Positions 1 to 39,081 are shown, numbered from the stretch's first letter. The stretch is 64,000 bases of DNA from Octopus bimaculoides (GCF_001194135.2 NC_068998.1:12191432-12255431); one strand, 5' to 3'. Made by a program: numbers and translations. The notes: generated by a model from the sequence alone, not told the origin.

Positions 1-88
1 AGTAACTGTCTGGAGACTGTACAAGTCGTTTTAGTTTACATTTCCTTCTTTCCTTTTCTAAGGAAGGATGCAATAAATCTTTAGCGAG
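1..88 (-). CDS. RPS27: 40S ribosomal protein S27 paralogue (copy B), exon 2, truncated by the window edge
   Basis: Reverse complement reads ttctgtttttgtcattgcag|CTC GCT AAA GAT TTA TTG CAT... = [29 protein letters not shown]. It differs from copy A exon 2 at 3 of 88 nt (two synonymous Arg changes, AAC>GAC). Confidence 0.93.
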
Positions 89-318
89 CTGCAATGACAA
101 AAACAGAAGAAATACATGAAATAAAATAGGTAGATACCAGTAATAGAAGATAGCGTGTGATAATAAGCCTAATAAGTAGTACAGAGTTCAGATACTTCCT
201 AACTGATGAAATTAAAAATAACTGCTATACACTATGTTGCAGTTGCAGTTGGCACTCCGTCNNNNNNNNNNNNNNNNNNNNNNNNNNNNNNNNNNNNNNN
301 NNNNNNNNNNNNNNNNNN

Positions 319-680
319 CTCCGTCGAGGGTTCCAGTCGATCCGCTCAACGGAACAGCCTGCTCGTGAAATTAACGTGCAAGTCGCTGAGCACTCCACAG
401 ACACGTGTACCCTTAACGTAGTTCTCGGGGATATTCAGCGTGACACAGTGTGACAAGGCTGACCCTTTGAATTACAGGTACAACAGAAACAGGAAGAAAG
501 AGTGAGAGAAAGTTGTGATGAAAGAGTACAGCAGGGTTCGCCACCATCCCCTGCCGGAGCCCCGTGGAGCTTTAGGTGTTTTCGCTCAATAAACACTCAC
601 AACGCCCAGTCTGGGAATCGAAACCACGATCCTATGACTGCGAGTCCGCTGCTCTAACTACTGGGCCATTGCGCCTCCAC
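319..680 (-). mobile_element. tRNA-derived SINE, family 1
   Basis: tRNA-like head (ggcgcaatggcccagtagttag...ggtttcgattccc) on -; near-identical copy at 18117-18455. Confidence 0.8.
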
Positions 681-1338
681 TATACACTATAGCACAGAGC
701 ATAAAGGAAATCAAGTCAGAACAAAACTAGAGTAAATGAAACAGATACACTGGTAATGAATTACATTTAGATACTAAATTATCAATTCCAATACATAATA
801 GGGTGTGATATATCAAATTAGAGTAGATAGGAGGTTTCTCCTGTAATGAAAATGAACTAAGAAAGCTCAATGGCTAACCAAATTGTTAGAGATAACAGCA
901 AAATTCCTCTCATATCATACTCTATATTCAAAAAGGAGGGACTTATTTGGATAATGTAGTTCTAGATATACTATGTCAGAACAAGAAGACAAAAAGGTTA
1001 CAGTAACAACAACTTGTAATGAAGACTGTGTTGTAAGGGCTTGCAAGATAACCTAACATACAGTAAGTCATAGAATAAATGTGGGAGCTGATTTTCGTAG
1101 AAAGCCTTAACTGCATGTGATCAATAAATTGAGCATTCAAAAAAAAAAAGGGTAACCAAAAATATAGCATATTTATAGGTCATAATAAGAAACACTGCAA
1201 CTCACTTCTACAACTGAGTGAACTGGAGCAACATGAAATAAAGTGTCTTGCTCAAGGACACAACACACAGTTCAGTCAGGGAATCAAACTCACTACCTCA
1301 TGATTGTGAATCTGACACTAACCACTGAGCTATGCGCC

Positions 1339-1388
<50 letters not shown>

Positions 1389-2940
1389 CTCTTTTCAATC
1401 TAGCACACTTATCTACCCACCCACTTTTTCCGCACCTCTATCCCTATTCTTTCTTTCTCTATCTCTTATTTACCTTGTGACTTGACCTCACATTCCTCTT
1501 CTCTTTCTAGATAGGGAAGCTATGTATTCAACTTTTCAGCAAGACATTTACCCCTATTTTTGTATCATACTTTCACATCCCTCTGAGTTGAAGGAGTCTT
1601 GTTTTGCACATACTTGGTAACTTCACCAGTTCTGATGCCATGAAAAAAATGTTTTTAAAATTACCCAGTACATTGTGAAGTGGTTGGCAACAGGAAAGGC
1701 ATTCAGGTGTAGAAACCAAAATTTTGGTTTTGGTCAGTTCAGTGCTATAGTTGAAGACACTTACTCAAGGTCTCACAAAGTGTGACTGAATCCGAAACCA
1801 TGTGACTGGGAAGCAAATTTCTTAACTACAGTCACACCAGTACCTATAGGCACATTTGCACTTATTGTCACTTGAGTAAAACTTGACAAAAATTGCACAG
1901 AAGCTAATCATGTGCATGTGTGTGTGTGTATACATGGACATACGAATGTGTAACTGCCTGCTACCATGAGTCTGCAGTGACACTAAGCAACAGTGATATT
2001 TGGGTACTAGTGGGATACAAGGGTCCTGAAATATTGACTTAATCATACAAAGAGCCCAACAATATCCTTTGTGGATTCTTGATTGTTTGTAAGTTTTTTA
2101 CAAAATTTATTATCTTTGTTCATTTTATTGCAATATATGATAGAAATAATTATAAAATAATAGACTATATATGTTTAAGGCGTATCCATTCCAACTTACA
2201 CCAAACTTGTATCGTTAAGTTAATGTTTCGGGACCCACGTCAAGCCCCTTGTATCATTAAGTCAATTATTTCGGGATCCTTGTATCCCACTAGTACCGAT
2301 ATTTGTTTACATTTCCCATAAACATTTAAGTCTTGTAGTTCATTGGTTTTGACATGTGAAGATCAGTGAAATAAAAAAATACAATACTTTAAAAAAAAAA
2401 GTTGATAACAAAAAAGGCATCTGACCATAGAATATTACTTCCAATAAGTCCCATCCAACCCATGCCATTGGGCCCCTTATCAACTTGCTAAACTGCAGTT
2501 ACACACACACACACAATTCAGTAAGCATACAATTTCAGTAGAGAAAATTCATAGAGGGTTATAGGCTCCCAGGAAAAACAGCTAATAGTAAAACACCTGT
2601 ACAAAGAACCAGGAATTAAAAATTTGCAGGTGGAGTAGTGTACCTCAAAACATAACCATAAGCCGATGAGAGCCCCTATGTGGTCTCTCAACTTTCTAAA
2701 AATAGCAACCAAACCTTTATAGCAACACACCCAATCACATAGGGTACTTGAAGGAGGATGAGACAATATATAGTCTGCCCTGGATGGTACTTTATATATT
2801 AGGTAATGTTTAGTAAGATGGGGTCTACAAAATCAAGGACCACTCCAGCTAGCACAAATCCTTATTATGCTCTATTTTTTTCTTTTTTAAAAAAAGAAAC
2901 GAAAATACATTGGATAATGTCATCCAAAAAATAAATAAAT

Positions 2941-3115
2941 AAGGCGCAGGAGTGGCTGTGTGGTAAGTAGCTTACTTACCAACCACATGGTTCTGGGTTC
3001 AGTCCCACGGCGTGGCACCTTGGGCAACTGTCTTCTACTATAGCCTCGGCCCGACCAAAGCCTTGTGAGTGGATTTGGTAGACAGAAACTGAAAGAAGNN
3101 NNNNNNNNNNNNNNN

Positions 3116-3156
<41 letters not shown>

Positions 3157-3362
3157 ATGTTTGTGTGTCTGTGTTTGTCCCCCCCAACTTCGCTTGACAA
3201 CCGATGCTGGTGTGTTTACGACCCCGTAACTTAGCGGTTCGGCAAAAGAGACCGATAGAATAAGTACTAGGCTTACAAAGAATAAGTCCTGGGGTCGATT
3301 TGCTCGACTAAAGGCGGTGCTCCAGCATGGCCACAGTCAAATGACTGAAACAATTAAAAGAG
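2941..3362 (+). mobile_element. tRNA-derived SINE, family 2, with internal (TA)n/(TG)n
   Basis: A-box/B-box-like head ggcgcaggagtggctgtgtggtaag...ggttcagtccc. Partial - strand copies near 1650-1820, 19050-19160, 22690-22850, 36370-36520, 49930-50100, 53890-54045 and 56660-56820. Confidence 0.8.
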
Positions 3363-4429
3363 TAAGTGAATGAATTACTCTGTATTTAGGTTACAGCAGA
3401 AACAACTACTCACTGAATTAGAGTAACTATCGTAACAAACAAACCTCAAAGACATGTTCAGACTTGTTTAAGCGCGCGCGCACGCACACACACACACACA
3501 CAGGGTTGTAATTTACATACACATGCAACTGCCTTTTGGACAATATATAGCAAACTGCTTTGTATACAAACACACACACGTTCATATTTATATTTAGTAT
3601 CTAGACGCCTGGTAGATAAATAAATGTAAACATAATTATTGACAAACTTGATACCATAGAGAGTAACTTGATAGTACATAAACAAACGTGGAGCCACTAC
3701 ATGGTTCCTTGGCATGCTAGAAATAGCAGCCAAGTCTCCTCACTAAAGAAGATATTGGACAATATAGGAGTGTACACTGTTTTTAATCTTAGGGCTAATG
3801 GTTTAAGCTCACTTCGGGCTAAACAAGAAAGGAGCCTCTATGTGGTCGCTTGACCTACTAGAAATGGTAACAAAATATCACTCAATTCACACCCCAATTG
3901 TCTTCGAAGGAAGGATACATTGCACAATGAGGTAGTCTCTGAATACAAAATGATAGGACAACTGCTACTGGAATCGGTGGTTCTCTACCAGGGTCCATTT
4001 GTTAAAATTTATGCACAATAAATTGGTTATACTTTTACAATGCACCAAATTTTTTAACAATTGTTTTTTTTTTTTTAATACAATTCCAAATATCTAATTC
4101 TAAAAATATAGGATGATATTTTTAAACATGGAAAGGCTATGAGAGTCCACCCAAGTAAAATAGGAATCAAAGGAATCCATTTGTAAAAAATGGTTTGTGA
4201 ACCATTGAACTAGATACAGTACAGACTATCCCCCCCCCCTCTCTATTCATCATCATTTTAACATCTACTTTCCTATGCTTTCATGGATCACATGAGAACA
4301 GATTGGAGCAGACTTTTTTATAACCAGATATCTTCCTGTTGCCAACACTACTTGTTTCCAAGCGAAGTAATAATCTCTCAGTCTAGTAAGCAACAAACAG
4401 CCTGGACATGGCCTACAGGACCATTTTAT

Positions 4430-6620
4430 CAGGTACTAAACCTCAGAGCTTCCACTATTAATGTTGACACAACAGAAAGTAAGACTAGAGAGATTACAGA
4501 CATGCTAGAGTAAGAAGTAGATGTTGTGTGCAAGAGATAAGATGGAGGGGGGGGGCCTTAGCCAGACTCCTCACATATAACAAATGCTTCTAAGTTAGAA
4601 AAGAAATGGGTAAAGTAATTGAGTTAGTAAGAGTATGTGAGAAAATAATTAAGTTTAAACTAATCTTAGACAGTGTGGCACAATAGTGATGCAATCATAT
4701 GCACCTTAACCCTTTCGTTACCAACCCGGCTGAAACCGGCTCTGGTTCTGTAGTACAAATGTTTTGTTCTCATAAGTTTTGAATTAAAATCTTTCACCAA
4801 ACCTTAGTTACAATTTATGTTCCTAATATGTGCTTAATGATTTATTTTACTAAATTCTTTGTTATACTTAAAATAATGGAAAGAAACACAGAGCATCTCA
4901 AAATAAATATGGTAACAAAAGGGTTAAGGACTGATAGACGAGCAAAAGAACCATTTCCCCAAGGTTCTTCAACTGACTATTTCGGTAATTAATGAGTGAC
5001 CTCATCATGATGTTACCTAATATATCTTTAATGGACCTGTGCAGCAGGTGTACATAGAGGCCATTTATGTAGTACAAGTAATGAAAAAGATTAAGGCTCT
5101 TGGAATTCCTCATGGAAAGAAGAGATATGATCAGATACTGAAAATATCTAGCACAGTAAGATATGCACTAATCACAGTCAAACCAGTAACACAGAGAGGT
5201 GTCATACTTCATGAGTGGCACAGAGATATAGTTATCCTTGAGTGAATTCTTTGCCAACAATGGCAAAGCTGATGCTCAAGAAAGATACAACTACAGAGAT
5301 ACTAAATTAATGGGCCAGGTTTAAAAAAAAAACAGAATACCTAAAGCTCAACTGATTAGGAAGAGAATTAGCTTAACTAAGATGCAATTTGGGTTTGAGC
5401 CAAGACATGTACCACCAATGTTCCCTTTCAAGTGAAACAATTGCAGATATAGACTTTCTTAGCTTAGAGTAAACCTAAACACATCAAACCTGCATTGATT
5501 CCATAAATGGAGATCTTGAGAATATCCACCAGTGGACCGTGTCAATCTTGTCTCATCAATAAGAAAAGAGTTTAAGCACTACTCGCATTAAGAAAATACT
5601 ATCCCCATCCCACTCCTCAGAATGAGTGGCACTCAGCAATAGCCCCAAAGGTAATTCCAAATGCCAGGCCTCATTGTCATCAAGGATCTCTCCTAGCAAA
5701 AGCACATCCTTAACGCAGCTAAGATTGCATTCTAAACAATGGCTTTTTCCTTCAGGGCCAGAAAATATTTCAACCCTCAACAATTACTGATACTCTACAA
5801 AGTTCAAGTGACTCTCAATGGAGATCTAGAATGCATGGTGGTGCTGCAAAACAGATATCCTGGGCTACAACCAGGGAAGGGCCATTCAATTGACTGACAT
5901 TAAATCACTTCCAGATGATATGCCTCAGCCCATGGCCTGTAAGCATGCTGTCAACTGTTTTTTTTTTTTCTATTACTACCATAACAACTTCTGTTCCTTA
6001 GACCTGGCTGGCCTTACACCAACTTCACACTCAAGAACTCCACAACTTGTTTCCCTTGTGCTTAACATTAAGGCTTTTGAACCACCATTTCCAGTCATTC
6101 CTACCCAGAACAACACTTAGCACTGGAACCTCTTCCCTGCTCACGTCTATTTCTTCATGTATTGATTTGCAGCAGTTTAAACGAAATACTAACAGCATCA
6201 ATCTCACCAGTTTTGAGTACAAACCTTTCCTCCATAAGAATTAGTGTTCAAGAGAGAAGACTGCACTGGTATGGTCATGTAATGTGTATGAACGAAGATA
6301 GTTGCATCAAGAGATGCTGGTCTCTCATTATGGAGGGAATGTGTAGAAGGTGTAGACCCAGGAAGACGTGGGACGAAGTGGTGAGAAAAGATCTACAGAT
6401 GTTGGGACTCAGAGACGCTGACAGGACTCCAAGACTCTTGTGCTTGTCCTCTACATCCCTCTCCAGCTAATCTTGCGAGCTCGCGAATGCTGGTGCCACG
6501 TAAACGCACCCGTGCCAGTGCTGTGTAAAAGCACCCAGTACACTCTGTTAAGTGGTTGGCGTTAGGAAAGACACCCAGCCGTAGAAACCATGCCAAAACA
6601 GACATGGGACCTGGGCAGTT
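4430..6620 (+). mobile_element. Decayed RTE-clade LINE
   Basis: Endonuclease-like start (TINVDT...EITDMLE...VQEIRWRG), QFGF-like RT fragment near 5385, C-terminal RRLHWYGHVMCM...RPRKTWDEVVRKDL at 6250-6410, then the common 3' tail. It is interrupted by a MITE at 4706-4927. Confidence 0.7.
4706..4927. mobile_element. piggyBac-like MITE, family A
   Basis: TTAA|CCCTTTCGTTACC...GGTAACAAAAGGG|TTAA; copies at 16841-17061 (reverse) and 42879-43107. Confidence 0.85.
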
Positions 6621-8126
6621 CTTCAGTGTATGTATAAATTCATCCATATAATAAATTCTATTATAGAGACCACTTATAACGTCTCGTGGCATTTTGACAT
6701 GATTTCTTTTACTCTGGATGTAGTTCTCGTTTAGCCCAAGGTTTGCTCTGTGTTGGCACAGACCCATGATCAATGGCATTCCAACCATCGCCACTATCCC
6801 TTATTTTCTCTATATACAGTTACTTAGGGCCACATTGTCCTACGTGTCCTTTTCAAAAGAGCGGATGCGATTTGAGGGTATGTGATTGCTTTCCGAGTAG
6901 ATCGAGTAACCAGGTATATAGGTACCCTCGTGTAACAAAAATACTCCTCAATTTACGCGAAAACAAAAACTATTTTATCAACCTACATTATTTGCTGTTG
7001 GATGTCTTCTGCAACACAACCCATCTATTTACACGAAATAAGGCCCCCATACGCATCTTTTTATACAGACATATAGGTCCGCGATGCACTAATGAACTAA
7101 GTAATCGTCAGAGAGCACCATTAACAAACATAACGAAAATTTTTAAAAAAACGTTTTCATATTGTCCTCATATCATTTTTATGATCGTGGTGTAATGTAG
7201 TAAAAAAAAATTTGCTTTTACTTCTTACTGAAAGCAACAGAGAATAATTTAGACATGCTGCACAGACATTTTGAAGAGAGAAAAGAAAAGAATATAGATT
7301 TCAAGAGAAAAGCAAACACGTGGGATAAAGTGGAAAAAACATATGGCGAAACATTACCACAATTAATTTATCAAAGATATACTCGATTTCGTTTCAACAT
7401 CTAAAAATATATATATAAATATAAAATAAATAACAAAGGACAAAAATATTTATGGTCTTTCCAAGAAATTGTCTTATAATAATAGTAATAGTAATAAGGC
7501 GTTCTTTCGAAATAACTATCATAAAATGCCAGTTAATTAAGTAAAGCAAAATATATTTTCTATTTCTCATACTTTTCCAGTGCTCTTTTTTTTTTTTTAG
7601 ACTTACTGTACCCACTACGATTTTTAATTATAAATTTTAACAAAAATAATGAACTGATAACATGTGTGTGTGCGTGCGTAGTTAATAATCAAAATCTATA
7701 TAGCTAATAATCAAAGATATTCTCTATTTCGTCTCTAATAATAAAATAAAAATGTAAAAATAAGAAAATCACTAAAATATTTACGGTCTTTCCAACAAAA
7801 TGTTTTACCAAACAAAAAAAATATAACTAAAATTCAATTAGTTATGAAAAATATATTGGAAAACTTTTACGAACTCCAGTTTAGCAATATATTTCCTAAA
7901 TAACGATCACACTATATATACATATACACATTATAAAATGCTTCTAAAATATTAATTAAACACGCACATGCCAACCAACACATGGCTGATCGAGGCAAGT
8001 TTTCACATCGGAATTATTATCGTCGAAAGACCAGAAGTATGCAAACATATAAAAGTATGCACAATTTAAAGGTATTTGGGAGGGTAAAATATTGATAATT
8101 AGACTTTTAAAAAATGTGAATCTAAC

Positions 8127-8132
8127 CGGCAT
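8127..8132 (-). CDS. RPS27: RPS27 paralogue (copy B), coding part of exon 1 (ATG CCG)
   Basis: Minus strand aaaccATG CCG|gttaga, the same ATGCCG|GTTAG as copy A exon 1. The phase-0 junction fits exon 2 at 88 and implies an 8.0-kb intron (89-8126). Only 6 coding nt, so support rests on this match. Confidence 0.75.
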
Positions 8133-8207
8133 GGTTTATACTTCGCAAGCAAATAACCAAGTTGGATAAGATGAAATTGGACTGCTGTAGTACGTGTNNN
8201 NNNNNNN

Positions 8208-8242
<35 letters not shown>

Positions 8243-9140
8243 AGAAGAGAGGGGGCGGAGTGATATAGTTATATATAAACTGAAAGAGAGGGTAAGAAAT
8301 ATAGTTATATATAAAGTACGAGAGAGGGGAGAGATATCATCATATACAAAGTAAGAGAGGGGAGAGAGATAACTATATACAAAATAAGACAGAGAGGAAG
8401 AAAGAGGGAGAGAGAAATACTTATATAAAGAGAGGGTGAACAGAGATATTATATATAATTTAACAGAGAGGAGGGATTGAGAGATTAGAAAGAAAGAAAG
8501 AGAGAGAGAGAAAAGAAATTTGAGCGAGAAAAGGCGAGATTAAATAGAGAGGGGAGAAATGAGGGAGTAACTGTGAAATTAGAAAAAAAAGAAAGAGACA
8601 GAGAGAAACAGTCACGTATTCAGCTGACAGTTCATTTGCTTTAGTATTATATTTGCTGCACTTTACTCAGAGACATTCCTCTTACGCTAGAAAACGAAAA
8701 ATACTATTCAGAGAACAACTTTGTTTTGGATTTGTACAAATCCTATATTAAAAGTTGATGGCTACTGAAATGTGATTATTCACTTCTTTAGGACTTTAGG
8801 GAGAAATTAGTAGAGACTGAAAATACTTTCTCCTATTTAAACACAAATCCCTTGCTAAGGAGAATAACTAGGATATTGTAACGCTACTTTTTTTACGTGG
8901 TATTTGTGTCGAGGGTGAAGTGTTATCTATGGTTTCAACCCAACATATAAAAAAAAAAACTATTTCGGGGGTTCGATTGCTCTGAAAATAACATCTCTGC
9001 GGCTATTAGTTTGAACCGAATTGAAGTGAAAAAATATAAGCTTTTCTCAACAACACTAACAGTAAAATGTTTTATATGGCACATTCTACCAGTGTCCGAA
9101 GTTTGAAAGTGTTCAGTTACAAAAAAAAAATTAATTTCTA

Positions 9141-9402
9141 ATCTGAACCTTTCCCCCCTTTTTTTTTTTTTTACGGAATCCCACGTTTTAGGCTATGGAG
9201 ATTCCGATTCTGAAAAAAAAATTTCAAAATTTCTATCCCCCCCCTCCGGTTTTTATATAGATCCACACCCGGTGGAAAAAGTGAAAAAAAAAATAGTGTA
9301 GTAGTTGAAATGCACCTTATATGAAATAAATATGAAGGAAAAAATGCGCTTTGGCAAACGGGGTTAGGGTTAGGTTTTGAGTTAGTGGGGAAAGGTTCAG
9401 AT
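9141..9402. repeat. Short-IR-bounded element with TTAGGG repeats
   Basis: Perfect 16-bp inverted repeat atctgaacctttcccc (9141-9156) / ggggaaaggttcagat (9387-9402); gggttagggttagg at 9361-9374. Confidence 0.6.
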
Positions 9403-10079
9403 AACATACAGCCCGTCTCCGCCGATTTGGCTGCAATCTCCAGCGGGTCGAGTGAATTCATAGAAACTCCGTCGTTGGTTCGTTATAATGAAATAAACTG
9501 GAAAGGTGATGTTCACCGTGGGTCAATATGGAGTGTAGGGGAAGCGCGTGCTGAAGAAATATTGGTGGGGTAACATATTTCTCAATAAAATATATATTGA
9601 GTAGTTCAGTCGCAAGGAGGAAAAAGGGAAAATTAATTTGATTTAAAATTAAGAAGCAAACTTGTTGCATGTTGACAAAATTTCAAAATTACCCCACCCT
9701 CCCCACGGTAAAGTATCAATGTTCATAATTAGGAGTTATACCCACGGAAAAAAATGAGAAAGGAAACTATATTAAGTAGTATATTTGCTTTCTATGTATC
9801 TTAGAACAAGGAATAAACAGGTAGATTTGATTTCAATGTTACGGTTTAACAGCCTGAATTTAATTTTCACCTAAATATGCAACACTTGTCACATTCTGAA
9901 CCTAAATTAAGTTCACTGATTTCAATATTCATGATATGTATTTGCTATACGAAGAATAAAAATATCAGCAAAAGCGTATATTTTCAGTTAGATATACAGC
10001 AACATTTAATTAATTATGGAAAAAGATTAATGGCATGAATACGATACTATTGCTGAGAATGAGTCGTTAACTTTATTAC

Positions 10080-10116
10080 TATATATATAAGCAATTCCCT
10101 CTTGAACTTCCTTTCT
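10080..10116 (+). promoter_or_regulatory. RPS27 copy A core promoter: TATA box plus TCT initiator / 5'TOP tract
   Basis: TATATAA at 10084-10090, then TCCTTTCT at 10109-10116 matching the YYC+1TTTYY TCT motif (predicted +1 at 10111), 26 nt before the ATG. This is typical of ribosomal protein genes. Confidence 0.75.
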
Positions 10117-10136
10117 GTACGGTTTAACGGGACATC

Positions 10137-10142
10137 ATGCCG
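10137..10142 (+). CDS. RPS27: RPS27 copy A exon 1 (MP)
   Basis: catcATG CCG|gttagt downstream of the TCT motif; the 2-codon first exon matches the conserved animal RPS27 structure. Confidence 0.88.
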
Positions 10143-10764
10143 GTTAGTAATTTGCTGCTCTGTTTTTTCGTCTGTTTTTGCTTTAATCTTCTCTCATTGT
10201 TGTCAAATATAACAAAGAAATCGTTAATTATTATCTTAATTAGGTAAAACTGCAATATTTAGCGTTATATTTGGTCTTTTGTTATGTTTTTTTCCCCGTT
10301 ATATAAACACATGCGACGTGACTTCCGCTTTATCGAATTTAATAATGGTGTCTGTTTAACAACAAAAACATTTCTCAATTAAAAGTGATATCTCTTTTAA
10401 TACATTTCCCCATTTAACCTTCTCTCAACAAGCTCTTTATATAATTTAATTCTGCAAGTTCTTTATTAAACATGTTTTACTAACTAAGATTACCGTGTGT
10501 GATCGCACACGATCTTGTTAAATAACTTAATTATAACACTTGTATTGGCTTAAAAGCGACCAAAAGGTCGGGAATTATCATATTTTCACTCCATTTATCT
10601 TGTTCTTGAAATCGTTATGTCAAGTCCTTCATTGGAAGATGTAATCTCTTTAAAATTTCTGTCTTTTTAGCAGGTATTCTAAGTGCGTGCTTTTAATTTA
10701 ATATTTCTGAAGACACGCGTGGTGAATGTTTAAGTGTTTAATATTTCTGTTTTTATCATTGCAG

Positions 10765-10873
10765 CTCGCTAAAGATTTATTGCATCCTTCCTTAGAAAAG
10801 GAACGAAGGAAATGTAAACTAAAAAGACTTGTACAGTCTCCAAACAGTTACTTTATGGATGTCAAATGCCCAG
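10765..10873 (+). CDS. RPS27: RPS27 copy A exon 2
   Basis: ttgcag|CTC...CCA G|gtaagt; [36 protein letters not shown], 109 nt. Confidence 0.97.
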
Positions 10874-13165: not shown

Positions 13166-13348
<183 letters not shown>

Positions 13349-15771: not shown

Positions 15772-15800
15772 GTTGTTCATTCAGAAGAAAACAACATTAA
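15772..15800 (+). CDS. RPS27: RPS27 copy A exon 4
   Basis: ttttccccag|GT TGT TCA TTC AGA AGA AAA CAA CAT TAA = GCSFRRKQH*. The joined CDS is 6+109+111+29 = 255 nt (84 aa). Confidence 0.96.
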
Positions 15801-15831
15801 TAGTGATGACCTGAAGTTATTTATGGTTTAA

Positions 15832-15837
15832 AATAAA
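15832..15837 (+). terminator. Polyadenylation signal of RPS27 copy A
   Basis: AATAAA 31 nt after the stop codon, followed by T-rich sequence. Confidence 0.75.
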
Positions 15838-17061: not shown

Positions 17062-18116
17062 CTTAATTTTAAATTGTGAAAATAATGTACAATTTAGTAA
17101 AATTACTTTATTATTAAGCTGATATTAGGAACTTCAATAGGTTTTAATTAAAATCACTTTAAAACAGGAAGTTAATATTGAATGAGGAACAATTTAACAT
17201 CAAGAAAGTTAATGTTGCAAGTTCTTTTGACAGCTCAATAGAAACAACTGGAAATCAATACTGGATTGTCAATGAAGCCATTTCCACTTTATTGATGAGT
17301 TTGTTCATTAACATTCAGCTTGGTGAATGAAGTTATAGGCTCCTTAGTTTAACCCCAGGTCAAACCTGATTAGAGGCATTTCGATCCTAACTGCCTCATC
17401 TAGGGAACTCCAGATCAGTGTGGCTATTTTTTAGAGGGTAATCATAGTGTGATTTGGCTGCTATTTCTAGCAGGTTGTACCAAGTAGATACTCTCAATTA
17501 CCAATGAATTTAACATCTCAGGTCCGAATATTTCTTTTCCAGCACCTTTCTAACATTACTATTAGCAGCAATCTTAGCTGGCTTCAGTTACTCATTTTAT
17601 GGCTGGCTAATGATGGTGTTAATCACTCTTTGTCTAAAGTAGGCATGGGTGAACTTACTTGCATTGGGCCAGGCCATAAGAGATTACTCATAAAGCTCTG
17701 TCCACACCACTAACAGGATAATACTGTAGGGAGTACAAGGGGGTGAGTTGGTTGAATTGTTCATATGCTGGGTAAAATGCTTCATGGTAATTCGTCTGAA
17801 GTATCAGTTGAGTTGATTTTTTTTTTTTCTAACCCCTTCAGGATGTTGCCCCTGCATAGCTGTAGCCCAATGACTGGATCATCGTCATCATTTAATGTCT
17901 GTTTTCCATGCTGGCATGGGTTGGAGGGTTTGAAAAGAGCTGTCTGGACTCCAATTGTCTATTTTGATATGGTTTCTATGGCTTGATATCTTTCTGTTGT
18001 GGAGGACACCCCCGAGTGAGAGAAGTGGGCTATTGCACCACAATTAAATAGTGGACAGGCACAAGTGGTGTCAAACTGCGAGGTACGCCATTTGGGCTAG
18101 TCATACAGACAATGAA

Positions 18117-18455
18117 GTGGAGGCGCAATGGGCCAGTGGTTAGCGCAGCGGACTTGCGGTTTCGATTCCCAGACTGGGCGTTGTGAGTGTTTATTGAGCG
18201 AAAACACCTAAAGCTCCACGAGGCTCGAGCAGGGGACAGTGGCGAACCCTGCTGTACTCTTCCACCACAACTTTCTCTCACTCTTACTTCCTGTTTCTGT
18301 TGTACCTGTATTTCAAAGGGCCAGTCTTGTCACACTGTATATCCCCAAGAACTACGTTAAGGGTACACGTGTCTGTGGAGTGCTCAGCCACTTGCACGTT
18401 AATTTTACGAGCAGGCTGTTCCGTTAAATGGATCAACTGGAACCCTCGATGGAGT
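18117..18455 (+). mobile_element. tRNA-derived SINE, family 1
   Basis: Same head and body as 319-680 in opposite orientation, with a short internal deletion. Confidence 0.8.
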
Positions 18456-20273
18456 GCCAACAACAACAGACAATGAAGTAAGTCGTTATAATGTGGGACA
18501 TATCAGTGTCAAGCAAGGCAACACTTTCCTAATGACAACCACTACACAGAGTATGCGGGTTGCTTTTCATGTGCCACCAGCACGGGAACAGATGACTTTG
18601 ACATACATTTATAAAAAAAAGCAAAAGGGTTGCTTGTGGCCCCAATGTCGGGCTTCTCATGCTTGAACTAAAGTATACACTATTTAATCCATTTCTGTCC
18701 ATTTGGTTTGTACTGGCCACACTACACAAAATTCTTTACCGTTTACCGGTTTGCTGAATGCAGCCACTTTATCGCTGGAGTTAAGTGACCCATTCCAAAA
18801 TTTTATACCAGACATCATATCTTGTCACTTTGAAGTCCACTTTTCCATCTTTGCATGTTGGATAAATCTTGTTAAAGTGCATTTACTACGGCCGATGACC
18901 TTTTTGTTGCCAACCCTTACCTGTTTCCAAGTAAGGTAATAATTCTCTTTGACCAGACGTTTTCATGGAAGATGAACGAAGGACAGTAACATTTGTTTAC
19001 AACTATCAAGGCAAAGAGACAGTAACACACACACACACATATATATACACATATGATAGGCTTCTTTAGGTTTCTGTCTACCAAATCACATGGCTTTGGT
19101 TGGCCCAGGGCTATAGCAGAAGACACTTGCTCGAGGTGTCACAAAGTGGGATTGAACCTGGAACCTTCAGAGAAAAAATTAAATCTGTACCTTAATATAG
19201 GATAATTTTATTTTAAGTATGTATACAATTTGGAATAATACATTGAGTCAATAAATAATAGGAGCATTGTTTTCTTTTTTACAATTGTTGTAATCAGAGT
19301 CTGAAAATGCTTATTTCTCTGTAGATTTCTTGGCTGTCTCAGCTTTGGATCTGAATATACTGCATGGCAATCAGTTTTTCTCTGATCTTCATCTAAAACA
19401 TTCATTATTCAACGTTAATATCAGCCATTTATGAAAAGAGAAAGGGAATACAAAAACCAAATGAGAATTATTGTGAATGCGGTTCACACAAGAAATGCAA
19501 GATTCAATCTATTAATATTCTAATCAGTTTGTTTCCATGCTGTAAAACCATTGCTAAAACTAGTTATAAATAGACATGATGACACACCACTCTTGATAGC
19601 AAGTTACTCATGCTGCACCTCCAGCAGTCAAAAGAAATCAGGTTTTTTTTTTTTTTGTCTGAGATGTTGTATATGTGTATGTGAGACAAGGTGTGTGGCC
19701 TAGGTGTTGCATTCATCATTGCAAGATCATGGTTTCAATTCCCAGCCTGGCAGTGCACTGTGTTGTTGAGCGAAACACTTCATTTCATGTTGCTCCAGTT
19801 CACCCAGTTGTGAATGGGTAACCCTGTAATGGATTAGAATTCCCTTTAAGGGGAATGTTGACCTGCCTACCTAGTGAGCAGGTTGGTATTATGGGAAAAT
19901 AAAACAATTCATTTCTACAGCTAAGTGAAATGGAGCTACATGAAATAAAGTGTCTTGCTCAAGAACACAACACACAGCCTGGCCCAGGAATCGAACTCAC
20001 CACCTCATGATTGTGATCCCAACACTCTAACAATGTGCCTTCACACACACATAAAATAATTGATTAAAAGTATTTTTGTATGGATAAAAGCAATAAACAT
20101 TAATTGAATTAAAGACTTGGTATATATGTAGAGTCTGATATTTAAAATGATTTACTTTTGTTGACAGCAATCTTAAAGTTTCTTAAACCATATATCAGTG
20201 AAACTTCAAATTCTCTATCAACACACTTATAGATATGTATATGTATATATGTGTGTTTGGAGACACATGATAA

Positions 20274-20335
20274 AATATACAATAATCCATTACAATATAA
20301 TATACAATAATCCATTACAATATAATATACAATAA
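20274..20335. repeat. 25-bp tandem duplication
   Basis: aatatacaataatccattacaatat repeated about 2.5 times. Confidence 0.85.
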
Positions 20336-20393
20336 TTCATGTTGGTGAAAATGAATTCTAAACAGTTAAAAAATATATATATAAAATAATTAC

Positions 20394-20579
20394 CTCTGTA
20401 AAGTTGTTGGGGCAGACTGAGATGTATTTCCATGGGCCTTGTTGAGACGCTGTCGGCGCTTTTGATGTGCAAGTGACAAAGAGGCACTTCTTATATTTAT
20501 TGGAGTATCGCGATTATTTGACAATTGACGAAGACTAAGGGAAGCTTGCCGAATTGAAGTGTACTGAGTTAGCTCAGAT
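20394..20579 (-). CDS. Alpha/epsilon-sarcoglycan-like gene, cytoplasmic-tail exon
   Basis: ttgcag|A TCT GAG...CAG AG|gtaatt, 186 nt open: SELTQYTSIRQASLSLRQLSNNRDTP...TLQ. It resembles the sarcoglycan post-TM Q-x-x-x-S-I...L-R-x-M/L-S-x-x-R motif, and the phase matches the TM exon donor. The next exon is unresolved. Confidence 0.75.
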
Positions 20580-20770
20580 CTGCAATGTAATGTTTGTGTG
20601 ATAAGTAAAACTAATGGAGTTTTAAGGATGTAGGATTTAGACCAGTGGCTAAACAGACAGCTAATAGGTTAAAGGTAGAGAGATGTACTCTATATATGTC
20701 ATTAGGACTGGCACAAACTATGTGCCATCTGGTTTAACACTGAAAATGTAAATAGTAGGTCGACACTAAT

Positions 20771-21081
20771 TTAACCTCTTAACATACACATTTGTCTTCA
20801 ATTTCTATGCAAAAAATATTTTTTATTTATTCATTTTGAATCTGTGTATAAGGAAGAATAAGTACACAAATTTTTTTGGATCAGTTATGATTTATTCCGA
20901 AGTTACTAATAGAAATGATGGTTAGTGGTAGAAGACAGGAATAACATCACAGATGAAGTATTTCAGGTTAGAAATAAGTGACAGATACCCCAGAGTATAG
21001 TGAATGTATATTTTCATTTAAATATATATTTACTAGATATGTCTGAATGAAAATATACGAGATAATATGTTAAGAGGTTAA
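20771..21081. mobile_element. piggyBac-like MITE, family C
   Basis: TTAA|CCTCTTAACATA...TATGTTAAGAGG|TTAA, perfect 12-bp TIR. Confidence 0.8.
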
Positions 21082-21239
21082 TGCTGATTATGATACCAGA
21101 ATTGCAGGTGCTAGCTCCAACATATTCGATCCACAGCAAAGAATATGTGTAAAAAACAACTTACTATCTTCAATTCAGTTTTTGTGCCTATCCTCACCTA
21201 TAGTCAAGAATGTTGGGTAACAACTGAAATATTGTTCCT

Positions 21240-21600
21240 CTGAAAGGTCTCTGAAGTGACGTTACCAGACAGGATGAGTAGCTCAGAGATCAGGGAGGCT
21301 CTCCAGCTTGAGTTGCTACTTCTCTGCTCTGAGAAGTCACAGCTCTGACACTACAGACATTTTATTAGAATGTCACAGGAAAGAACTGCTAGACAAATTC
21401 TTTGAGCTGAGCTAACCAGCAAGATTCCTCGAGGTGGACCAAGAATGAGATGGTTAGATAATATTCATCGTCTCTGTTGGATATACTTGGGAATTCAGTT
21501 GGACAGTATAATGATGGCTGCTTCTGATAAAACCCCACGAAAGGTATGCCTTAGGGCTACCTAGATGAACCTCCCAGGAATAGAAAGTGGAGAAGATGGA
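21240..21600 (+). mobile_element. RTE-like LINE 3' fragment
   Basis: Frameshifted RTARQIL..ELTSKIPRGGPRMRWLDNI, typical of the RTE C-terminus. Confidence 0.5.
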
Positions 21601-22622
21601 TGGATGGTTGGAAAAATATTAGTGGATTGAATAGCTTTGTAAATAAAAAGAGAAGCATACATTGCCATGTATTTTATACAAGATCTTTTTTATGACAACT
21701 GTTTTATCAGACAGTTGAACCAGTACATGAGTAATATGGCGATGAGCAAAGAGTCTTGTCCCACCTCAAAATGCAATAACTGTGATTGGGTGTTAAACTA
21801 TGAGACAAATAGCTCAATATGGATCATTGTTTCTAAAAATCAAAAAAAATTAACTTACTCTGGTGTCTGACAAATTCTTTTCTCTCTGGAAAGAAGAAAA
21901 AAACAAAACATTTTAGATAACTGCTACTATATATTTTTGTATTTATTTGCAACTTCATAAAAATATACTGAATAAACCATTTGAGATTTTAAAGTGAGAG
22001 AATGAGAGATCAGGACTGATTATTTCTCCCCTAATATAAATTAAATTAGTGAAATTGATTCTCAATTTTATCAAAATTACCTCTCATTCCTAGCACCTCT
22101 AGGCTATTGTTTATTTTCTCCTATTTAATGGTCATCTCCTCAGATAATGTTGGGCTTTGGTGCTATTTTATCTAAAATGCCTTTAACAATTGACCAGGAA
22201 GCAGTGATTAAACACTATACTTTAGTGAGTAAAATTTTGTTGCAGTATATTTTCTTATTTATAGGCATAATTTTAAAGATACACGTTGTGGCTCTTGAAC
22301 ATAAAACAAAAATCATATATGGCTCATCATATGAAATTTGGTCATATAATAAGACACGGAAAAACAATCAAATATATAATGACTGTCATCAACATCATAT
22401 CATTTTCACATCCACTTTTCCATGCTTGCATGAGTCATATGGAATATTACAAGCAGATTCCCTTTCTGTTGCCAGCATTGCAAAGATGTTTTCCCATGGT
22501 TAGACATGTTTACACCGAAGATTAGAACTGAATGGCATAGCTTGCACATTAATTTCATGAGCAAGCAGTTCTGTTGATCGTATCAGCTGGGACCCTCATC
22601 GTCATAACAGATGGAGTGCTCC

Positions 22623-22627
<5 letters not shown>

Positions 22628-22685
<58 letters not shown>
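22628..22685. repeat. (TA)n microsatellite (representative)
   Basis: About 29 TA units. Similar (TA)n/(CA)n/(TG)n tracts at ~1342-1388, 3115-3150, 8208-8238, 37350-37389, 38036-38068 and 44482-44555; several abut N gaps. Confidence 0.95.
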
Positions 22686-22689
<4 letters not shown>

Positions 22690-23000
22690 AAACTTCTTTC
22701 AGTTTCTGTCCAACAAATCCACTCATAAAGCTTTGGTCAGCTTGGGATTATAGCAGAAGACACTAGCTCTGGGGGCCATGCAGTGGGATTGAAACAAAAA
22801 CCACATGGCTGGGAAGCAAACTTCTCACTACACAGAAATGCCTGCACCCATGTGTTATCTAAAATGGGTTGTGAACTATTAGGGCAGGTATATTACCTCT
22901 GCTATATGGTCCACATCACAAGTGGCTGGAAATAGATTTTAATTTCTGTAATAGAATCAATACTAGACTAGAAGATTCAGAAATGCTGAAACATACTCAC

Positions 23001-23179
23001 ATGCCAACTCTACCACAACACATCATGCAGCTGAGAAAGAGAACAACCAAAAGCAATACAGCAGCTGGTATGATGACAAACGTCACAAAATCAGGAAATA
23101 TGTCATGGCAGCGTTCACTGAGACATTTGGGAGGATCAAAATCATCGACGATAGGAAGCACATTATCCAAGAGGATCAT
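23001..23179 (-). CDS. Alpha/epsilon-sarcoglycan-like gene, transmembrane exon (open part)
   Basis: MILLDNVLPIVDDFDPPKCLSERCHDIFPDFVTFVIIPAAVLLLVVLFLSCMMCCGRVG then AT|gtgagt. It resembles the SGCE/SGCA ILP...PP...D-x-x-x-DF-TM-MCC-R-x-G segment recalled from vertebrate proteins. The strong acceptor at 23223 is separated from this frame by two in-frame TGA codons. Confidence 0.72.
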
Positions 23180-33099: not shown

Positions 33100-36000
33100 C
33101 ATAATTCCTCATCTCTTAAATATAGAACTGTAAAGAAAAAATGTTTTTCTATCATTTATGTGNNNNNNNNNNNNNNNNNNNNNNNNNNNNNNNNNNNNNN
33201 NNNNNNNNNNNNNNNNNNNNNNNNNNNNNNNNNNNNNNNNNNNNNNNNNNNNNNNNNNNNNNNNNNNNNNNNNNNNNNNNNNNNNNNNNNNNNNNNNNNN
33301 NNNNNNNNNNNNNNNNNNNNNCACTCTTTTGGTCAGGAACGTGGACCGCTTTTAACGACTTGGGCAATTTGGGATATAGTCATAGGAATCGTTAATTGTA
33401 CACGAAATATTTTAAATTTAGAAAACTGGATTATAGTCGCGTAAAAATTGACCAGCTTAAGGTTATGGACTGTATAAGATATATGATCTTGCAGAATGTA
33501 TATTTTTGGTGACGAAGTATTTTTCAGTTATTGATGCAAGTCTGTATTTACTCTTTGTGACTATAATTTTTTTAAAAATAAATTTTACAGATTTTTTTAG
33601 TGGAGATGAGAAATTAATTAATTTTAAAAAATACATTTCGTTGTTATTTTAAGTAGACGTAAAATCAACGTGTACTGATGGTTAGATGTAAAACTGTACA
33701 TCATGCACTAATATACAAGTCTAGCTTTCTTTTGTCTCCTGCAAAATGTTTCGTCCCTCCAAATCCCTCATTAGTCCTTCCAATAAACCAAATAAGCTAA
33801 CAAATTCAAAAGATAGCGTGCTATAACTTCTTTTACAGGCATATTTGAATATATATTTGTAGTATATTGTCTTCTTTATTGATCACATAAAATTCAACCT
33901 ATTCGATTAGTTGAAACCCATTGAGACCATAGGAATAAAAGCACTTTTAAACAGAGGTAACTTATTAAGGCTTCCATTCTACGCCGCGAACTTACTTCTA
34001 AATCGTAGTTATCTCCCCTTTTCATGGCACTGTCATGAACGAAAGAATTAACGACTTTGGCAACACAGCTGCGATTTGATGGATTCCTGCAGTCTACAGA
34101 TATGGTTTGTAATATACATCATGTATTTTAACCCACATTTTCACGTAGTTTATAATTAAACAGGAAAATACTAAATATTCTGCCTAATTTTTCTACATTT
34201 CCTGCCTTCCATTCAAACTCATGATGTAAAGTATAACAAGCGGATTTTAGGCATATTGTTTCTTTTCTTCAACACTCCCTAAATCTTATTTTAGATTTTT
34301 ATCTTATTTTCTGATTATGTTTATGTCCGTGTATTGACACCGATCTATCGCCTCGCAACCACTGCATCTTCTGGTGGGAATTTTCCACTCTATAGAAATA
34401 CCATTACTCCTTATTGAATAATGCTTATATATATATATTACAAAAATTCTTTTATTAATCTAACACTCTAGGGATACTATCTTTTCTTTATCTTTAAATT
34501 TTTCTCCTTGGAGGTCGAAACGGCTACCGAAATTCTATCGATTGCTGTCTTGAGGTGCCGGAGGAGTTTTCAGAACAAGCTTTGTCTCACCTTAGAGGAG
34601 GCGGAGGAGGAGGAAGAAAGATGATGATATAAACAAAAGGTGATGGAATATTTATTCAAGTTTATTATTATTATTTGTTTAAATTTAATATTGACTTTTA
34701 ATATTTTCCACTGAAACGGAACCACATGGAAAGAATTAGACATGACGCTTCTGTTTATCCCTGCCTCTTGTATCGTTCCATACATAGAATTAGTAACTGT
34801 TTTCATCGGTATGCTGGCATATTGGCGATTTGTTGAAGAAGAAACGCCTCTCCTTACGTGTGATGTTGCCTACGTGCGTCATTTGCCACTAAACACATCG
34901 TTAATTCATAATCAGCAATTCAACAGATAGCCTTTTTGTTTTGCTTTTTTGTTTTTTACTGAAGATGATCAGTCAGCATCATAGACTATTGCGATATTGT
35001 ACTATTTACATTATTTACAGATATTTGTGTGTGTATATCCATACGTATGAATGTATAGAAAAAATACTTGAACGTGTGAATCATGTTACACACATACACA
35101 CACACAGATATGTGTTTCTTCATAGATGTGTTATGCCTGTCAGCCAAGGTTTGGTCATGGCTGTTTCGCTCTTGTCAGGTTCGAGTAATACTGTTGTGTA
35201 TCTATTGAATATAAAAGGCAACAGTAGGAATGGTAGTAATACGTTAGAGAGATGAAGCAGTCAACCAGGTGAAAGAATGTGACAGCCACGCGTACCTGCC
35301 ATGTTCAGCCAATGGAACAGTCGACATCTAGAGAACTGCCGTACCAAAGAAACGAGAAACAATGTATGTGTGCGTGCGGGTGTTTGTGTATTTATATATG
35401 TACAGACATATGGTAGAAAATTGGTTCGTACATTATGCTAATTTAAATAAAAAATCTGTTGTATTTTAACGGAACCCTTGTATTTTTTACTCCAAATTTA
35501 ATTCGTTCTGATATCTAAACTTTGTATAAACCATATTCTGTATTTGTTTTTTGTTTTTTATCTTCCTTCACATCTCCATCAGTCTCGTCACACTCCACTT
35601 CACGTGTGCCCCAGTCTTCTTAGTTATCCTCTCAAATTATTCCCTCTTTTGGGTTACATTTGTTCGCATGGCTGTCAATATTGTTGACAAGATCGTTGCA
35701 CAATAATTTTTGCGTGAGGTAAATGTTACTATAACTTAGAGATTTTCAGGGTCCGTTGCTAAAATAGATTTATTATAAACTGCTCCCTGTGTAAATGTTT
35801 TCTTCAGATGTCACATCAAAGGCATCCCTATCGGCGTAAAAGAACTATTTTCGTAATTAATAAACTCCTATATTTATAAGGAATTGTTCCCAGCACTTGT
35901 ATTATATCCATGATGAAAGAATAAACATCTCTCACAAACAAATCTAATTTATACCAAGTTCCCATTTTACCCTTCCCTATGGATTTATCTATTATCTTTC

Positions 36001-36336
36001 ATTTGTTTCAGTCATTGGACTGCGGCTATGCTGGGGCAGTTTGGAAGGTTTAGACGAGCACATCGACCCCAGTACTAATTCTTAAATCTGGTACTTATTG
36101 TATTGTCTCTTTTGCCGAACTGCTAAGTTACAGGGATATAAAGAAAACAAAATCGGTTGTCAAGCAGTGGTTGGATACAAACATACACATGTCCGTCACT
36201 AAAGGGGTGCACTGGACAGTACTTTCCCCTCACTGTTCAATGGTGTACCCTCAGATTTACAGTGATACACTTATTTCGAAACTTCACTTCAGCATTATTA
36301 CAAATTACTGCCCACCAAAATCTGGCAACGGGCCTG

Positions 36337-37344: not shown

Positions 37345-37389
<45 letters not shown>

Positions 37390-38902: not shown

Positions 38903-39081
38903 GTACGTACATTATCTTTCAAATTACAGTTGTTTTTATCCCATCTCTATATGTTATAGCTTCAAACCAGTGTGTATTATATCTGATAAGCTCTATGTTT
39001 AGTTGTTGTCGTTTATGTTTAGCTTGAGTTCTGAATTTTTTGTTTAATATTTATTTTTTTTTATTCTTTACAGTTTGTAAA

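What the first reader, a model, noticed from the sequence alone, without database searches (positions are those of the whole stretch)
1..10142. Hidden second RPS27 gene, head-to-head with the first
The first 88 nt on - are a splice-intact RPS27 exon 2, and 8127-8132 carries ATG CCG|GTTAG identical to copy A exon 1. The start codons face away from each other about 2.0 kb apart. Intron 1 is 622 nt in copy A but 8038 nt and TE-filled in copy B, and intron similarity survives only about 22 nt before the acceptor. Of the three exon differences, two are synonymous, which suggests purifying selection. Vertebrate RPS27/RPS27L are a known paralogue pair; this looks like an independent local inverted duplication (inference) and a candidate for ribosome heterogeneity.
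Basis: partly seen in the sequence, partly recalled or inferred. Interest (0 to 1): 0.78.

Follow-up and report, generated by a model that had tools for sequence, protein, structure and literature searches.

The report
Annotated second octopus eS27 (RPS27) gene
The window does hold the 5' part of a second, intact ribosomal protein S27 gene lying head-to-head with the first, but public databases already annotate it as one of three clustered octopus copies whose coding exons stay nearly identical, so it is a tidy but fairly ordinary gene-family case.

Summary
Window 1-88 (-) is the first 88 nt of a splice-intact eS27 exon 2, and 8127-8132 (-) is ATGCCG|GTTAG, identical to copy A's exon 1.

The window is Octopus bimaculoides chromosome CM046618.1. 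DNA left of the window holds the rest of exon 2 plus exons 3 and 4, all open with GT-AG introns. The product is an 84-aa protein that NCBI already lists as XP_014769526.1 (UniProt A0A0L8HTN6), so the gene is not hidden.

A third copy, C, lies 28 kb further left, beyond a dUTPase gene. The A/B head-to-head pair is also present in O. sinensis and in Argonauta hians.

Copy B has its own 3'UTR, which is conserved between Octopus and Argonauta. Even so, the coding exons of paralogues within a lineage (dS 0.14-0.34) are much closer than positional orthologues across genera (dS 0.68-0.86), and paralogue introns cannot be aligned. That pattern indicates an old duplication, exon-limited gene conversion and strong purifying selection (dN/dS 0.01-0.07).

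Mis-assembly is excluded. All three gaps are non-coding and are spanned collinearly by the gap-free O. sinensis locus.

Protein-level ribosome heterogeneity is weakly supported. B and A are identical in O. sinensis and apparently in O. vulgaris; only O. bimaculoides B carries N29D.

The parts
1..88 (-). Copy B (eS27 paralogue) exon 2: the first 88 of its 109 nt. The last 21 nt, exon 3, exon 4 and the TGA stop lie left of the window (L001 18133-19949).
   Evidence: AG acceptor and GT donor are present. It is identical to NCBI model XP_014769526.1.
89..8126 (-). Copy B intron 1 (8038 nt), rich in repeats. It contains assembly gaps 262-318 and 3099-3115.
   Evidence: It is collinear with the 12,281-nt O. 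sinensis intron at 84-93% identity. It cannot be aligned with copy A's intron 1 except for the last ~20 nt.
236..679 (.). O. bimaculoides-specific repeat insertion in B intron 1. It holds gap 1 (262-318). A related copy lies at window 18116-18454 (87% identity).
   Evidence: Its flanks abut at O. sinensis L004 22127-22137.
2944..3351 (.). O. bimaculoides-specific repeat insertion in B intron 1. It holds gap 2 (3099-3115) and a (TA)n run.
   Evidence: Its flanks abut at L004 18242-18256. The two sides of the gap are contiguous in a related copy at L004 5404-5809.
7968..8048 (-). Alternative first coding exon of NCBI isoform X1 (MFAYFWSFDDNNSDVKTCLDQPCVGWH). It is probably not a conserved coding sequence.
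   Evidence: Two 1-nt indels break this frame in O. sinensis.
8127..8132 (-). Copy B exon 1 coding part (ATGCCG = Met-Pro), followed by the donor GTTAG.
   Evidence: The same exon and flanks occur in O. sinensis B. ATGCCG|GTAGG occurs in Argonauta B.
8133..8197 (-). Copy B 5' flank: putative 5'UTR and core promoter. It includes ACACGTACTACAGCAGTCCAATTTCATCTTATCC (8164-8197) and is unrelated to copy A's promoter.
   Evidence: It is nearly identical in O. sinensis. Similarity to Argonauta B is weak (8-9 of 500 shuffles reach the score). The transcription start was not determined.
8198..8403 (.). Gap 3 (8198-8207), an (AT)15 run and a 33-36-nt GA-rich tandem repeat in the A-B intergenic region.
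10037..10136 (+). Copy A promoter and 5'UTR: GAATACGATAC box (10037-10047), TATA-like CTATATATATAAG (10079-10091) and pyrimidine (TOP-like) tract CTTCCTTTCT (10107-10116).
   Evidence: It is conserved in O. sinensis A, Argonauta A and copy C (0 of 500 shuffles reach the score). It is absent from B.
10137..10142 (+). Copy A exon 1 coding part (ATGCCG).
10765..10873 (+). Copy A exon 2.
13212..13322 (+). Copy A exon 3.
15772..15837 (+). Copy A exon 4: coding 15772-15800 with TAA stop, then the 3'UTR up to AATAAA at 15832-15837.

Best explanation
Copy B is a real, intact and selectively maintained paralogue of the small-subunit ribosomal protein eS27 (RPS27). It belongs to a three-gene cluster on O. 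bimaculoides chromosome CM046618.1. The order is C (-), dUTPase (+), B (-), A (+), and the cluster spans 52.6 kb.

Shown:
- All three genes keep the ancestral four-exon structure (6/109/111/29 nt) and canonical splice sites.
- The A/B head-to-head pair also exists in O. sinensis and in Argonauta hians, so the duplication predates the split of those octopod lineages.
- B carries its own 5' flank and its own 3'UTR. The 3'UTR is conserved between Octopus and Argonauta although the introns are not.
- A and C share a TATA + TOP-type promoter.

Inferred:
- The coding exons, with 20-90 nt of adjoining intron, are repeatedly homogenised among the paralogues by gene conversion (concerted evolution), on top of strong purifying selection.
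- This explains why exon 2 of A and B differs at only 3 of 88 positions while the introns share nothing.
- B is transcribed from its own promoter and spliced across the 8-kb repeat-laden intron 1. It contributes an eS27 protein identical or nearly identical to that of A.
- Retention is most likely through dosage or divergence in expression pattern rather than a different protein activity, as was shown experimentally for mouse Rps27/Rps27l.
For: Identity and completeness
- Searches place the window in GCA_001194135.2.
- Searches give exons 3 and 4 of B, which are open, with a TGA stop and GT-AG at every intron.
- One search shows the exact 84-aa product is XP_014769526.1 / A0A0L8HTN6.
- Pfam Ribosomal_S27e scores 103 bits against a cut-off of 24.5.
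- The protein aligns end to end with solved eS27 chains.

Third copy and synteny
- Searches give C and the same gene order in O. sinensis.
- Searches give head-to-head A/B in Argonauta, next to the same 131/132-aa neighbouring gene.

Age
- The B 3'UTR of Octopus against Argonauta gives a local score of 71, against a shuffle maximum of 23 (0 of 500).
- It is the only non-exonic block that aligns between the two B loci (253 nt, 70% identity).
- A versus B UTRs are not similar.
- Synonymous site 243 is G in all three B genes and A in all A and C genes.

Concerted evolution
- CDS differences are 8-15 within Octopus and 17 within Argonauta, against 28-37 between positional orthologues.
- dS is 0.14-0.34 within a lineage against 0.68-0.86 across genera.
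- Both Argonauta copies share the derived G58A. Their exon 3 plus flanks is 94.8% identical over 155 nt.
- Linked sites 46 and 67 are shared by ObiA and ObiC but not by their O. sinensis orthologues.
- Paralogue introns cannot be aligned, although orthologous Obi/Osi introns are 84-93% identical.

Selection
- dN/dS is 0.01-0.07 in every comparison, including B against B across genera (0.013-0.018).

Precedents
- CDS-limited gene conversion of ribosomal protein paralogues is described in fungi (PMC6993855).
- Expression subfunctionalisation of Rps27/Rps27l is described in mouse (PMC10313321).
Against: - No transcript, junction read or peptide evidence for B was available here. Expression is inferred from conservation and from the existence of NCBI isoform models.
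- B's 5' flank is only weakly similar between Octopus and Argonauta (8-9 of 500 shuffles reach the score). It is no better conserved than the neighbouring intron between the two Octopus species, so a functional promoter is not demonstrated.
- The gene conversion signals rest on small exons and few sites.
- Conservation of splice-proximal intron sequence could be selection rather than the edge of a conversion tract.
- N29D in O. bimaculoides B hits a residue that is Asn in 126 of 131 homologues. This could signal relaxed constraint or a sequencing error.
- The octopus 80S model 9EHO carries the sequence of copy C, not B. That says nothing for B.
Confidence: 0.8

Rival explanations
1. One reading: a fairly recent local inverted duplication in the Octopus lineage. 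The exons are kept alike by purifying selection alone, and the introns were simply overwritten by transposon turnover.
For: Paralogue dS is only about 0.2-0.3. B's intron 1 has gained lineage-specific repeat insertions. The two genes lie 2 kb apart in inverted orientation.
Against: - The same head-to-head pair is present in Argonauta.
- The B-specific 3'UTR is orthologous between the genera, with 0 of 500 shuffles reaching the score.
- Orthologous introns at dS about 0.08-0.14 still align at 84-93%. Introns of paralogues at a true dS of about 0.25 should therefore still align, and they do not.
- Synonymous sites behave close to neutrally between orthologues, so selection alone cannot hold paralogue dS down.
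Confidence: 0.08
2. Copy B is a non-expressed or non-functional copy. Its open reading frame looks intact only because gene conversion from the active copy A keeps repairing it.
For: Conversion among the copies is evident. No expression data were available. N29D alters a nearly invariant residue. B's promoter differs from the TATA/TOP promoter of A and C.
Against: - Parts that show no sign of conversion from A are still intact in three species: exon 1 with its donor, every splice site, and exon 4 with B-specific synonymous states and a TGA stop.
- B's private 3'UTR, including the AATAAA region, is conserved between genera while introns have decayed beyond alignment. That is expected only for a transcribed, selected mRNA.
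- NCBI's pipeline produced several isoform models for the locus.
Confidence: 0.08
3. Copy B specifies a functionally distinct eS27 protein that builds specialised ribosomes (protein-level ribosome heterogeneity).
For: O. bimaculoides B differs from A by N29D, and C differs by H84Y in both Octopus species. The solved octopus ribosome model 9EHO uses the C sequence.
Against: - B encodes exactly the A protein in O. sinensis. Two consecutive O. vulgaris accessions also carry the A sequence. A conserved B-specific protein function is therefore not supported.
- Gene conversion keeps erasing differences between the copies.
- In mouse, the eS27 and eS27L proteins proved interchangeable (PMC10313321).
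Confidence: 0.05
4. Assembly artefact: a mis-placed second haplotype of copy A, or a scaffolding error across the gaps.
For: Three N gaps lie in the region, and the exons are 96% identical.
Against: - Intron lengths and sequences are entirely different.
- There are 12 CDS differences between A and B.
- The same arrangement is present in the gap-free O. sinensis assembly and in Argonauta.
- The sequence on both sides of every gap is collinear with O. sinensis.
Confidence: 0.01

Closest known systems
Vertebrate Rps27 / Rps27l (eS27 / eS27L) paralogue pair
   Same: Both are retained eS27 paralogues of 84 aa with near-identical proteins. [quoted passage not shown] Retention in mouse is explained by subfunctionalised expression (PMC10313321).
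   Different: - The vertebrate pair are ohnologues on different chromosomes, with highly diverged coding DNA and three fixed N-terminal differences (K5R, P12L, R17K).
- The octopus copies form a 53-kb local cluster and show low paralogue dS (concerted evolution).
- All octopus copies read K5, L12, R17.
- The origin is independent. That paper found no invertebrate among nine sampled with more than one copy.
Concertedly evolving ribosomal protein gene duplicates of fungi (and plants)
   Same: Paralogue dS is far below the divergence of introns and flanks. Homogenisation is confined to coding sequence and is interpreted as repeated gene conversion that helps retention (PMC6993855; PMC4679983 listed).
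   Different: - In fungi the duplicates are dispersed (whole-genome duplication or retroposition), and cDNA donors were proposed.
- Here the copies are linked, two of them inverted 2 kb apart.
- Similarity extends 20-90 nt into the introns, so genomic-DNA donors are at least as likely.
- Animals usually keep a single functional copy per ribosomal protein family.
Processed ribosomal protein pseudogenes / retrocopies
   Same: This is the commonest kind of extra ribosomal protein gene sequence in animal genomes.
   Different: Copy B keeps all three introns at the ancestral positions and has an intact ORF under purifying selection. It is not a retrocopy.

Membership tests
eS27 (Ribosomal_S27e, PF01667) | Match to the Pfam family profile above its gathering score | tested here: met
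   B scores 103.4 bits, A and C 105.1 bits; the cut-off is 24.5. The match covers profile positions 1-55 of 55.
eS27 (Ribosomal_S27e, PF01667) | Four zinc-binding cysteines (CxxC...CxxC) and the usual ~84-aa length | tested here: met
   C37, C40, C56 and C59 are present in A, B and C. The protein aligns end to end (1-84) with human, rabbit and octopus eS27 chains in solved ribosomes.
eS27 (Ribosomal_S27e, PF01667) | Incorporation of this particular copy's product into 40S subunits | not testable with these tools
   PDB 9EHO (octopus 80S) models eS27 with the copy C sequence. The A and B products cannot be told apart without proteomics or paralogue-specific expression data.
Functional (non-pseudogene) paralogue | Complete ORF, canonical splice sites and dN/dS well below 1 on its own lineage | tested here: met
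   the gene is intact in O. bimaculoides, O. sinensis and Argonauta. B-versus-B dN/dS is 0.013-0.067.
Functional (non-pseudogene) paralogue | Evidence of transcription and correct splicing | not testable with these tools
   No RNA-seq access. The indirect evidence is the conserved private 3'UTR and NCBI's multi-isoform model.
Vertebrate RPS27/RPS27L ohnologue pair | Origin by whole-genome duplication (copies on different chromosomes) and the diagnostic K5R/P12L/R17K differences | tested here: not met
   The three copies lie within 52.6 kb of one chromosome. All have K5, L12 and R17.
Concertedly evolving paralogues (gene conversion) | Paralogues within a lineage are more alike in CDS than positional orthologues between lineages, while flanks retain orthology | tested here: met
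   (CDS differences 8-17 against 28-37). (dS 0.14-0.34 against 0.68-0.86). (3'UTR orthology of B; promoter orthology of A).
Concertedly evolving paralogues (gene conversion) | Statistically supported conversion tracts (for example GENECONV) with population or multi-species sampling | not tested
   Only site patterns were inspected: sites 46/67, site 84 and G58A. The exons are too short and the taxa too few for a formal tract test.
Processed retrocopy | Lack of introns, poly(A) remnant | tested here: not met
   Three introns at the ancestral positions.

The most novel reading that the evidence does not exclude
Octopods independently built a long-lived three-paralogue eS27 system. B has a private promoter and 3'UTR, A and C share a TATA/TOP promoter, and the exons are held together by gene conversion. 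This system would be subfunctionalised in expression (for example neural versus other tissues, or developmental stages), in parallel with vertebrate Rps27/Rps27l.

The few protein differences would also be used: Y84 in C, which is the sequence modelled in the octopus 80S structure, and D29 in O. bimaculoides B. It would be a natural invertebrate replicate for testing why ribosomal protein paralogues are retained.
Probability: 0.3. Interest if true: 0.5.

Novelty: already known. Interest (0 to 1): 0.3.

Why it matters
The gene itself is already in RefSeq and UniProt, so there is nothing new to annotate. Two modest points remain.

(1) Animals normally keep one functional gene per ribosomal protein, and a recent survey found no invertebrate among nine sampled with more than one Rps27 (PMC10313321). 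Octopods, with three linked, intact and conserved copies, are therefore an independent case of eS27 paralogue retention.

(2) The cluster is a clean small example of exon-limited concerted evolution between linked paralogues, two of them inverted, in an animal.

Anyone quantifying octopus eS27 expression, designing qPCR primers or modelling the octopus ribosome should know that three nearly identical genes exist. They can be told apart only by their UTRs, a handful of synonymous sites, N29D and H84Y.

Tried and rejected
- Intronic snoRNA or other RNA as a reason for retention: Rfam gave no match at gathering thresholds on the window, L001 or L003, and there are no tRNA or tRNA-like genes.
- Transposon protein domains in B's intron 1: the two ORFs of 110 aa or more there (6393-6794, 6773-7195) have no Pfam hit.
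- Extra conservation of B's 5' flank between O. bimaculoides and O. sinensis as evidence of a promoter: identity there (88-91%) is no higher than the intron background of 88.6%. The two species are too close for this test.
- NCBI isoform X1's 27-aa N-terminal extension as a real alternative protein: the frame is broken by two 1-nt indels in O. sinensis, so it is treated as a prediction by-product.
- A shared bidirectional promoter for A and B: the ATG-to-ATG distance is 2.0 kb here, 14.5 kb in O. sinensis and 3.1 kb in Argonauta, and the two 5' flanks are unrelated. The idea is not supported.
- Literature search for prior description: papers matching 'RPS27' and 'octopus' concern Rps27a as a qPCR reference gene, not eS27 paralogues. 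The octopus ribosome preprint does not mention eS27 paralogues.
- Not achieved: copy number in squids, cuttlefish and Nautilus, and whether Argonauta has copy C. The tools give no taxon-directed search of eukaryote genomes.

Full report
**What is in the window.**
Copy A of eS27 (RPS27) lies on the + strand. Its coding exons are at 10137-10142, 10765-10873, 13212-13322 and 15772-15800, and every intron is GT-AG. It encodes an 84-aa protein that is 82-100% identical per exon to human RPS27.

On the - strand, window 1-108 matches A's 10745-10852 in 104 of 108 positions. Positions 88-1 read [29 protein letters not shown] behind a ttgcag acceptor.

The 12-mer CATGCCGGTTAG (start codon, Pro codon and donor) occurs only at 8122-8133 (-) and 10136-10147 (+). 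About 0.14 matches are expected by chance even with one mismatch allowed.

**Source, and the part beyond the window edge.**
A protein search returned 'S27-like isoform X1 [Octopus bimaculoides]', which carries the same SPDSYF variant. Its encoding contig places the window on chromosome CM046618.1 of GCA_001194135.2, where record position = window position + 12,191,431.

Locus L001 extends 11.8 kb left of the window. It contains the last 21 nt of exon 2, exon 3 (111 nt) and exon 4 (29 nt, TGA stop). All are in frame with canonical splice sites.

The resulting 84-aa protein is exactly XP_014769526.1 / UniProt A0A0L8HTN6, named 'isoform X3'. The gene is therefore complete, but it is also already annotated.

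Isoform X1 uses an alternative first exon (window 8048-7968). Its reading frame is not preserved in O. sinensis.

**Assembly gaps.**
None of the three gaps touches an exon. The gap-free O. sinensis orthologue (L004) is collinear with the whole O. bimaculoides B locus at 84-93% identity.

- Gap 1: the flanks of the O. bimaculoides-specific insertion that contains it (window 236-679) abut in O. sinensis.
- Gap 2: likewise for the insertion at window 2944-3351.
- Gap 3: it lies in (AT)n / GA-rich low complexity, 66-75 nt upstream of B's ATG.

**A three-gene cluster conserved in octopods.**
The exact-sequence look-up revealed a third 84-aa copy, C, ending in ...RRKQY (XP_014769504.1). It lies at record 12,154,653-12,161,321 (-) and is separated from B by a dUTPase gene.

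O. sinensis has the same order: A, B, dUTPase, C, then a YrdC-domain gene. All six genes are intact.

In O. sinensis, B encodes the same protein as A. Two consecutive O. vulgaris accessions also carry the A sequence.

Argonauta hians carries a head-to-head A/B pair next to the same 131/132-aa neighbouring gene, on two haplotig-like contigs.

**Old duplication with young-looking exons.**
CDS differences:

| Comparison | Differences |
|---|---|
| Obi-Osi orthologues | 4-7 |
| Octopus paralogues | 8-15 |
| Argonauta A versus B | 17 |
| Octopus versus Argonauta positional orthologues | 28-37 |

NG86 dS is 0.14-0.34 for paralogues within a lineage and 0.68-0.86 for orthologues across genera. dN/dS is 0.01-0.07 throughout.

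Taken alone, this would suggest separate recent duplications. The non-coding flanks say otherwise.

- B's 3'UTR aligns between Octopus and Argonauta with score 71, against a shuffle maximum of 23 (0 of 500). It is the only non-exonic block that aligns between the two B loci.
- A's promoter is conserved between Octopus A, Argonauta A and copy C (0 of 500).
- A-versus-B flanks are unrelated.
- Synonymous site 243 in the short exon 4 is B-specific in all three species.
- Paralogue introns share only 20-90 nt next to the exons. Yet orthologous introns at dS of about 0.1 align at 84-93%.

Several site patterns point to gene conversion:

- Both Argonauta copies share the derived G58A, and their exon 3 region is 94.8% identical over 155 nt.
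- Linked sites 46 and 67 are shared by ObiA and ObiC only.
- Site 84 is shared by OsiA and OsiB only.

The best reading is an ancient duplication followed by recurrent exon-centred gene conversion plus strong purifying selection. This is the pattern described for fungal ribosomal protein paralogues (PMC6993855).

**Function.**
B belongs to Pfam Ribosomal_S27e, keeps the four zinc-binding cysteines, and aligns end to end with eS27 chains of solved ribosomes.

The single A/B protein difference in O. bimaculoides, N29D, hits a residue that is Asn in 126 of 131 homologues. Asp occurs only in the two O. bimaculoides B isoforms. Since O. sinensis B has Asn, D29 is a species-specific change, a polymorphism or an error, not a defining feature of B.

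The octopus 80S structure 9EHO models eS27 with the copy C sequence. Its paper does not discuss paralogues.

I infer that B is transcribed from its own promoter, which differs from the TATA/TOP promoter of A and C, and that it supplies essentially the same protein. Retention would then be through dosage or divergence in expression, as was demonstrated for mouse Rps27/Rps27l (PMC10313321). Expression itself could not be tested here.

**Verdict.**
The gene is real, intact and independent of the vertebrate pair. It is not hidden, not a simple recent duplicate and not one of only two copies, and it is a weak candidate for protein-level ribosome heterogeneity.
- Novelty: already known as an annotated gene.
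- The cluster's concerted evolution, and its status as an invertebrate case of eS27 paralogue retention, appear undescribed in the searchable literature. They are of modest interest.

Noticed in passing
Left of the window: L003 10001-16669 (CM046618.1 12,154,653-12,161,321, - strand): A third intact eS27 gene, copy C (XP_014769504.1), whose protein ends ...RRKQY instead of ...RRKQH. It shares copy A's TATA/TOP-type promoter and is conserved in O. sinensis. Its sequence is the one modelled as eS27 in the octopus 80S structure PDB 9EHO.
   Followed up: partly
L007 6484-6945 and L008 6628-6942 (Argonauta hians): In Argonauta copy B, the tiny first coding exon with its donor (ATGCCG|GTAGGT) and about 35 nt of upstream sequence is tandemly repeated, 5 times in L007 and 4 times in L008, in units of about 85-145 nt. 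This gives several potential alternative first exons.
   Followed up: no
window 39040-40851 (+): An uninterrupted 603-codon ORF whose first Met is at codon 15 (MLEPVHSMRGK...). It is not low-complexity in appearance and has no Pfam match. It may be an intronless gene or a very large exon of an unannotated or lineage-specific gene.
   Followed up: partly
window ~19389-23179 (-): A called gene for a 131-aa protein with no Pfam family lies immediately downstream of copy A. The same neighbour is present in O. sinensis (131 aa) and in Argonauta (132 aa), which made it useful as a synteny anchor.
   Followed up: no
window 236-679 and 2944-3351; related copies at 18116-18454 and at 19061-19165, 22633-22848, 35995-36189, 49959-50089, 53897-54051, 58642-58837: Short (~400-450 nt) dispersed repeat families have inserted into B's intron 1 in O. 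bimaculoides since its split from O. sinensis. Both assembly gaps in the intron fall inside these insertions.
   Followed up: partly
window 8208-8403: An (AT)15 microsatellite followed by about 5 copies of a 33-36-nt GA-rich tandem repeat lies in the A-B intergenic region. The orthologous interval is about 200 nt longer in O. sinensis, and the whole A-B spacer is 14.5 kb there against 2.0 kb here.
   Followed up: partly
window 33163-33321 and 37390-37798: Two further assembly gaps (159 and 409 N). The second is flanked by long (TA)n-type simple repeats, which produce spurious ORFs at 37173-37947.
   Followed up: no
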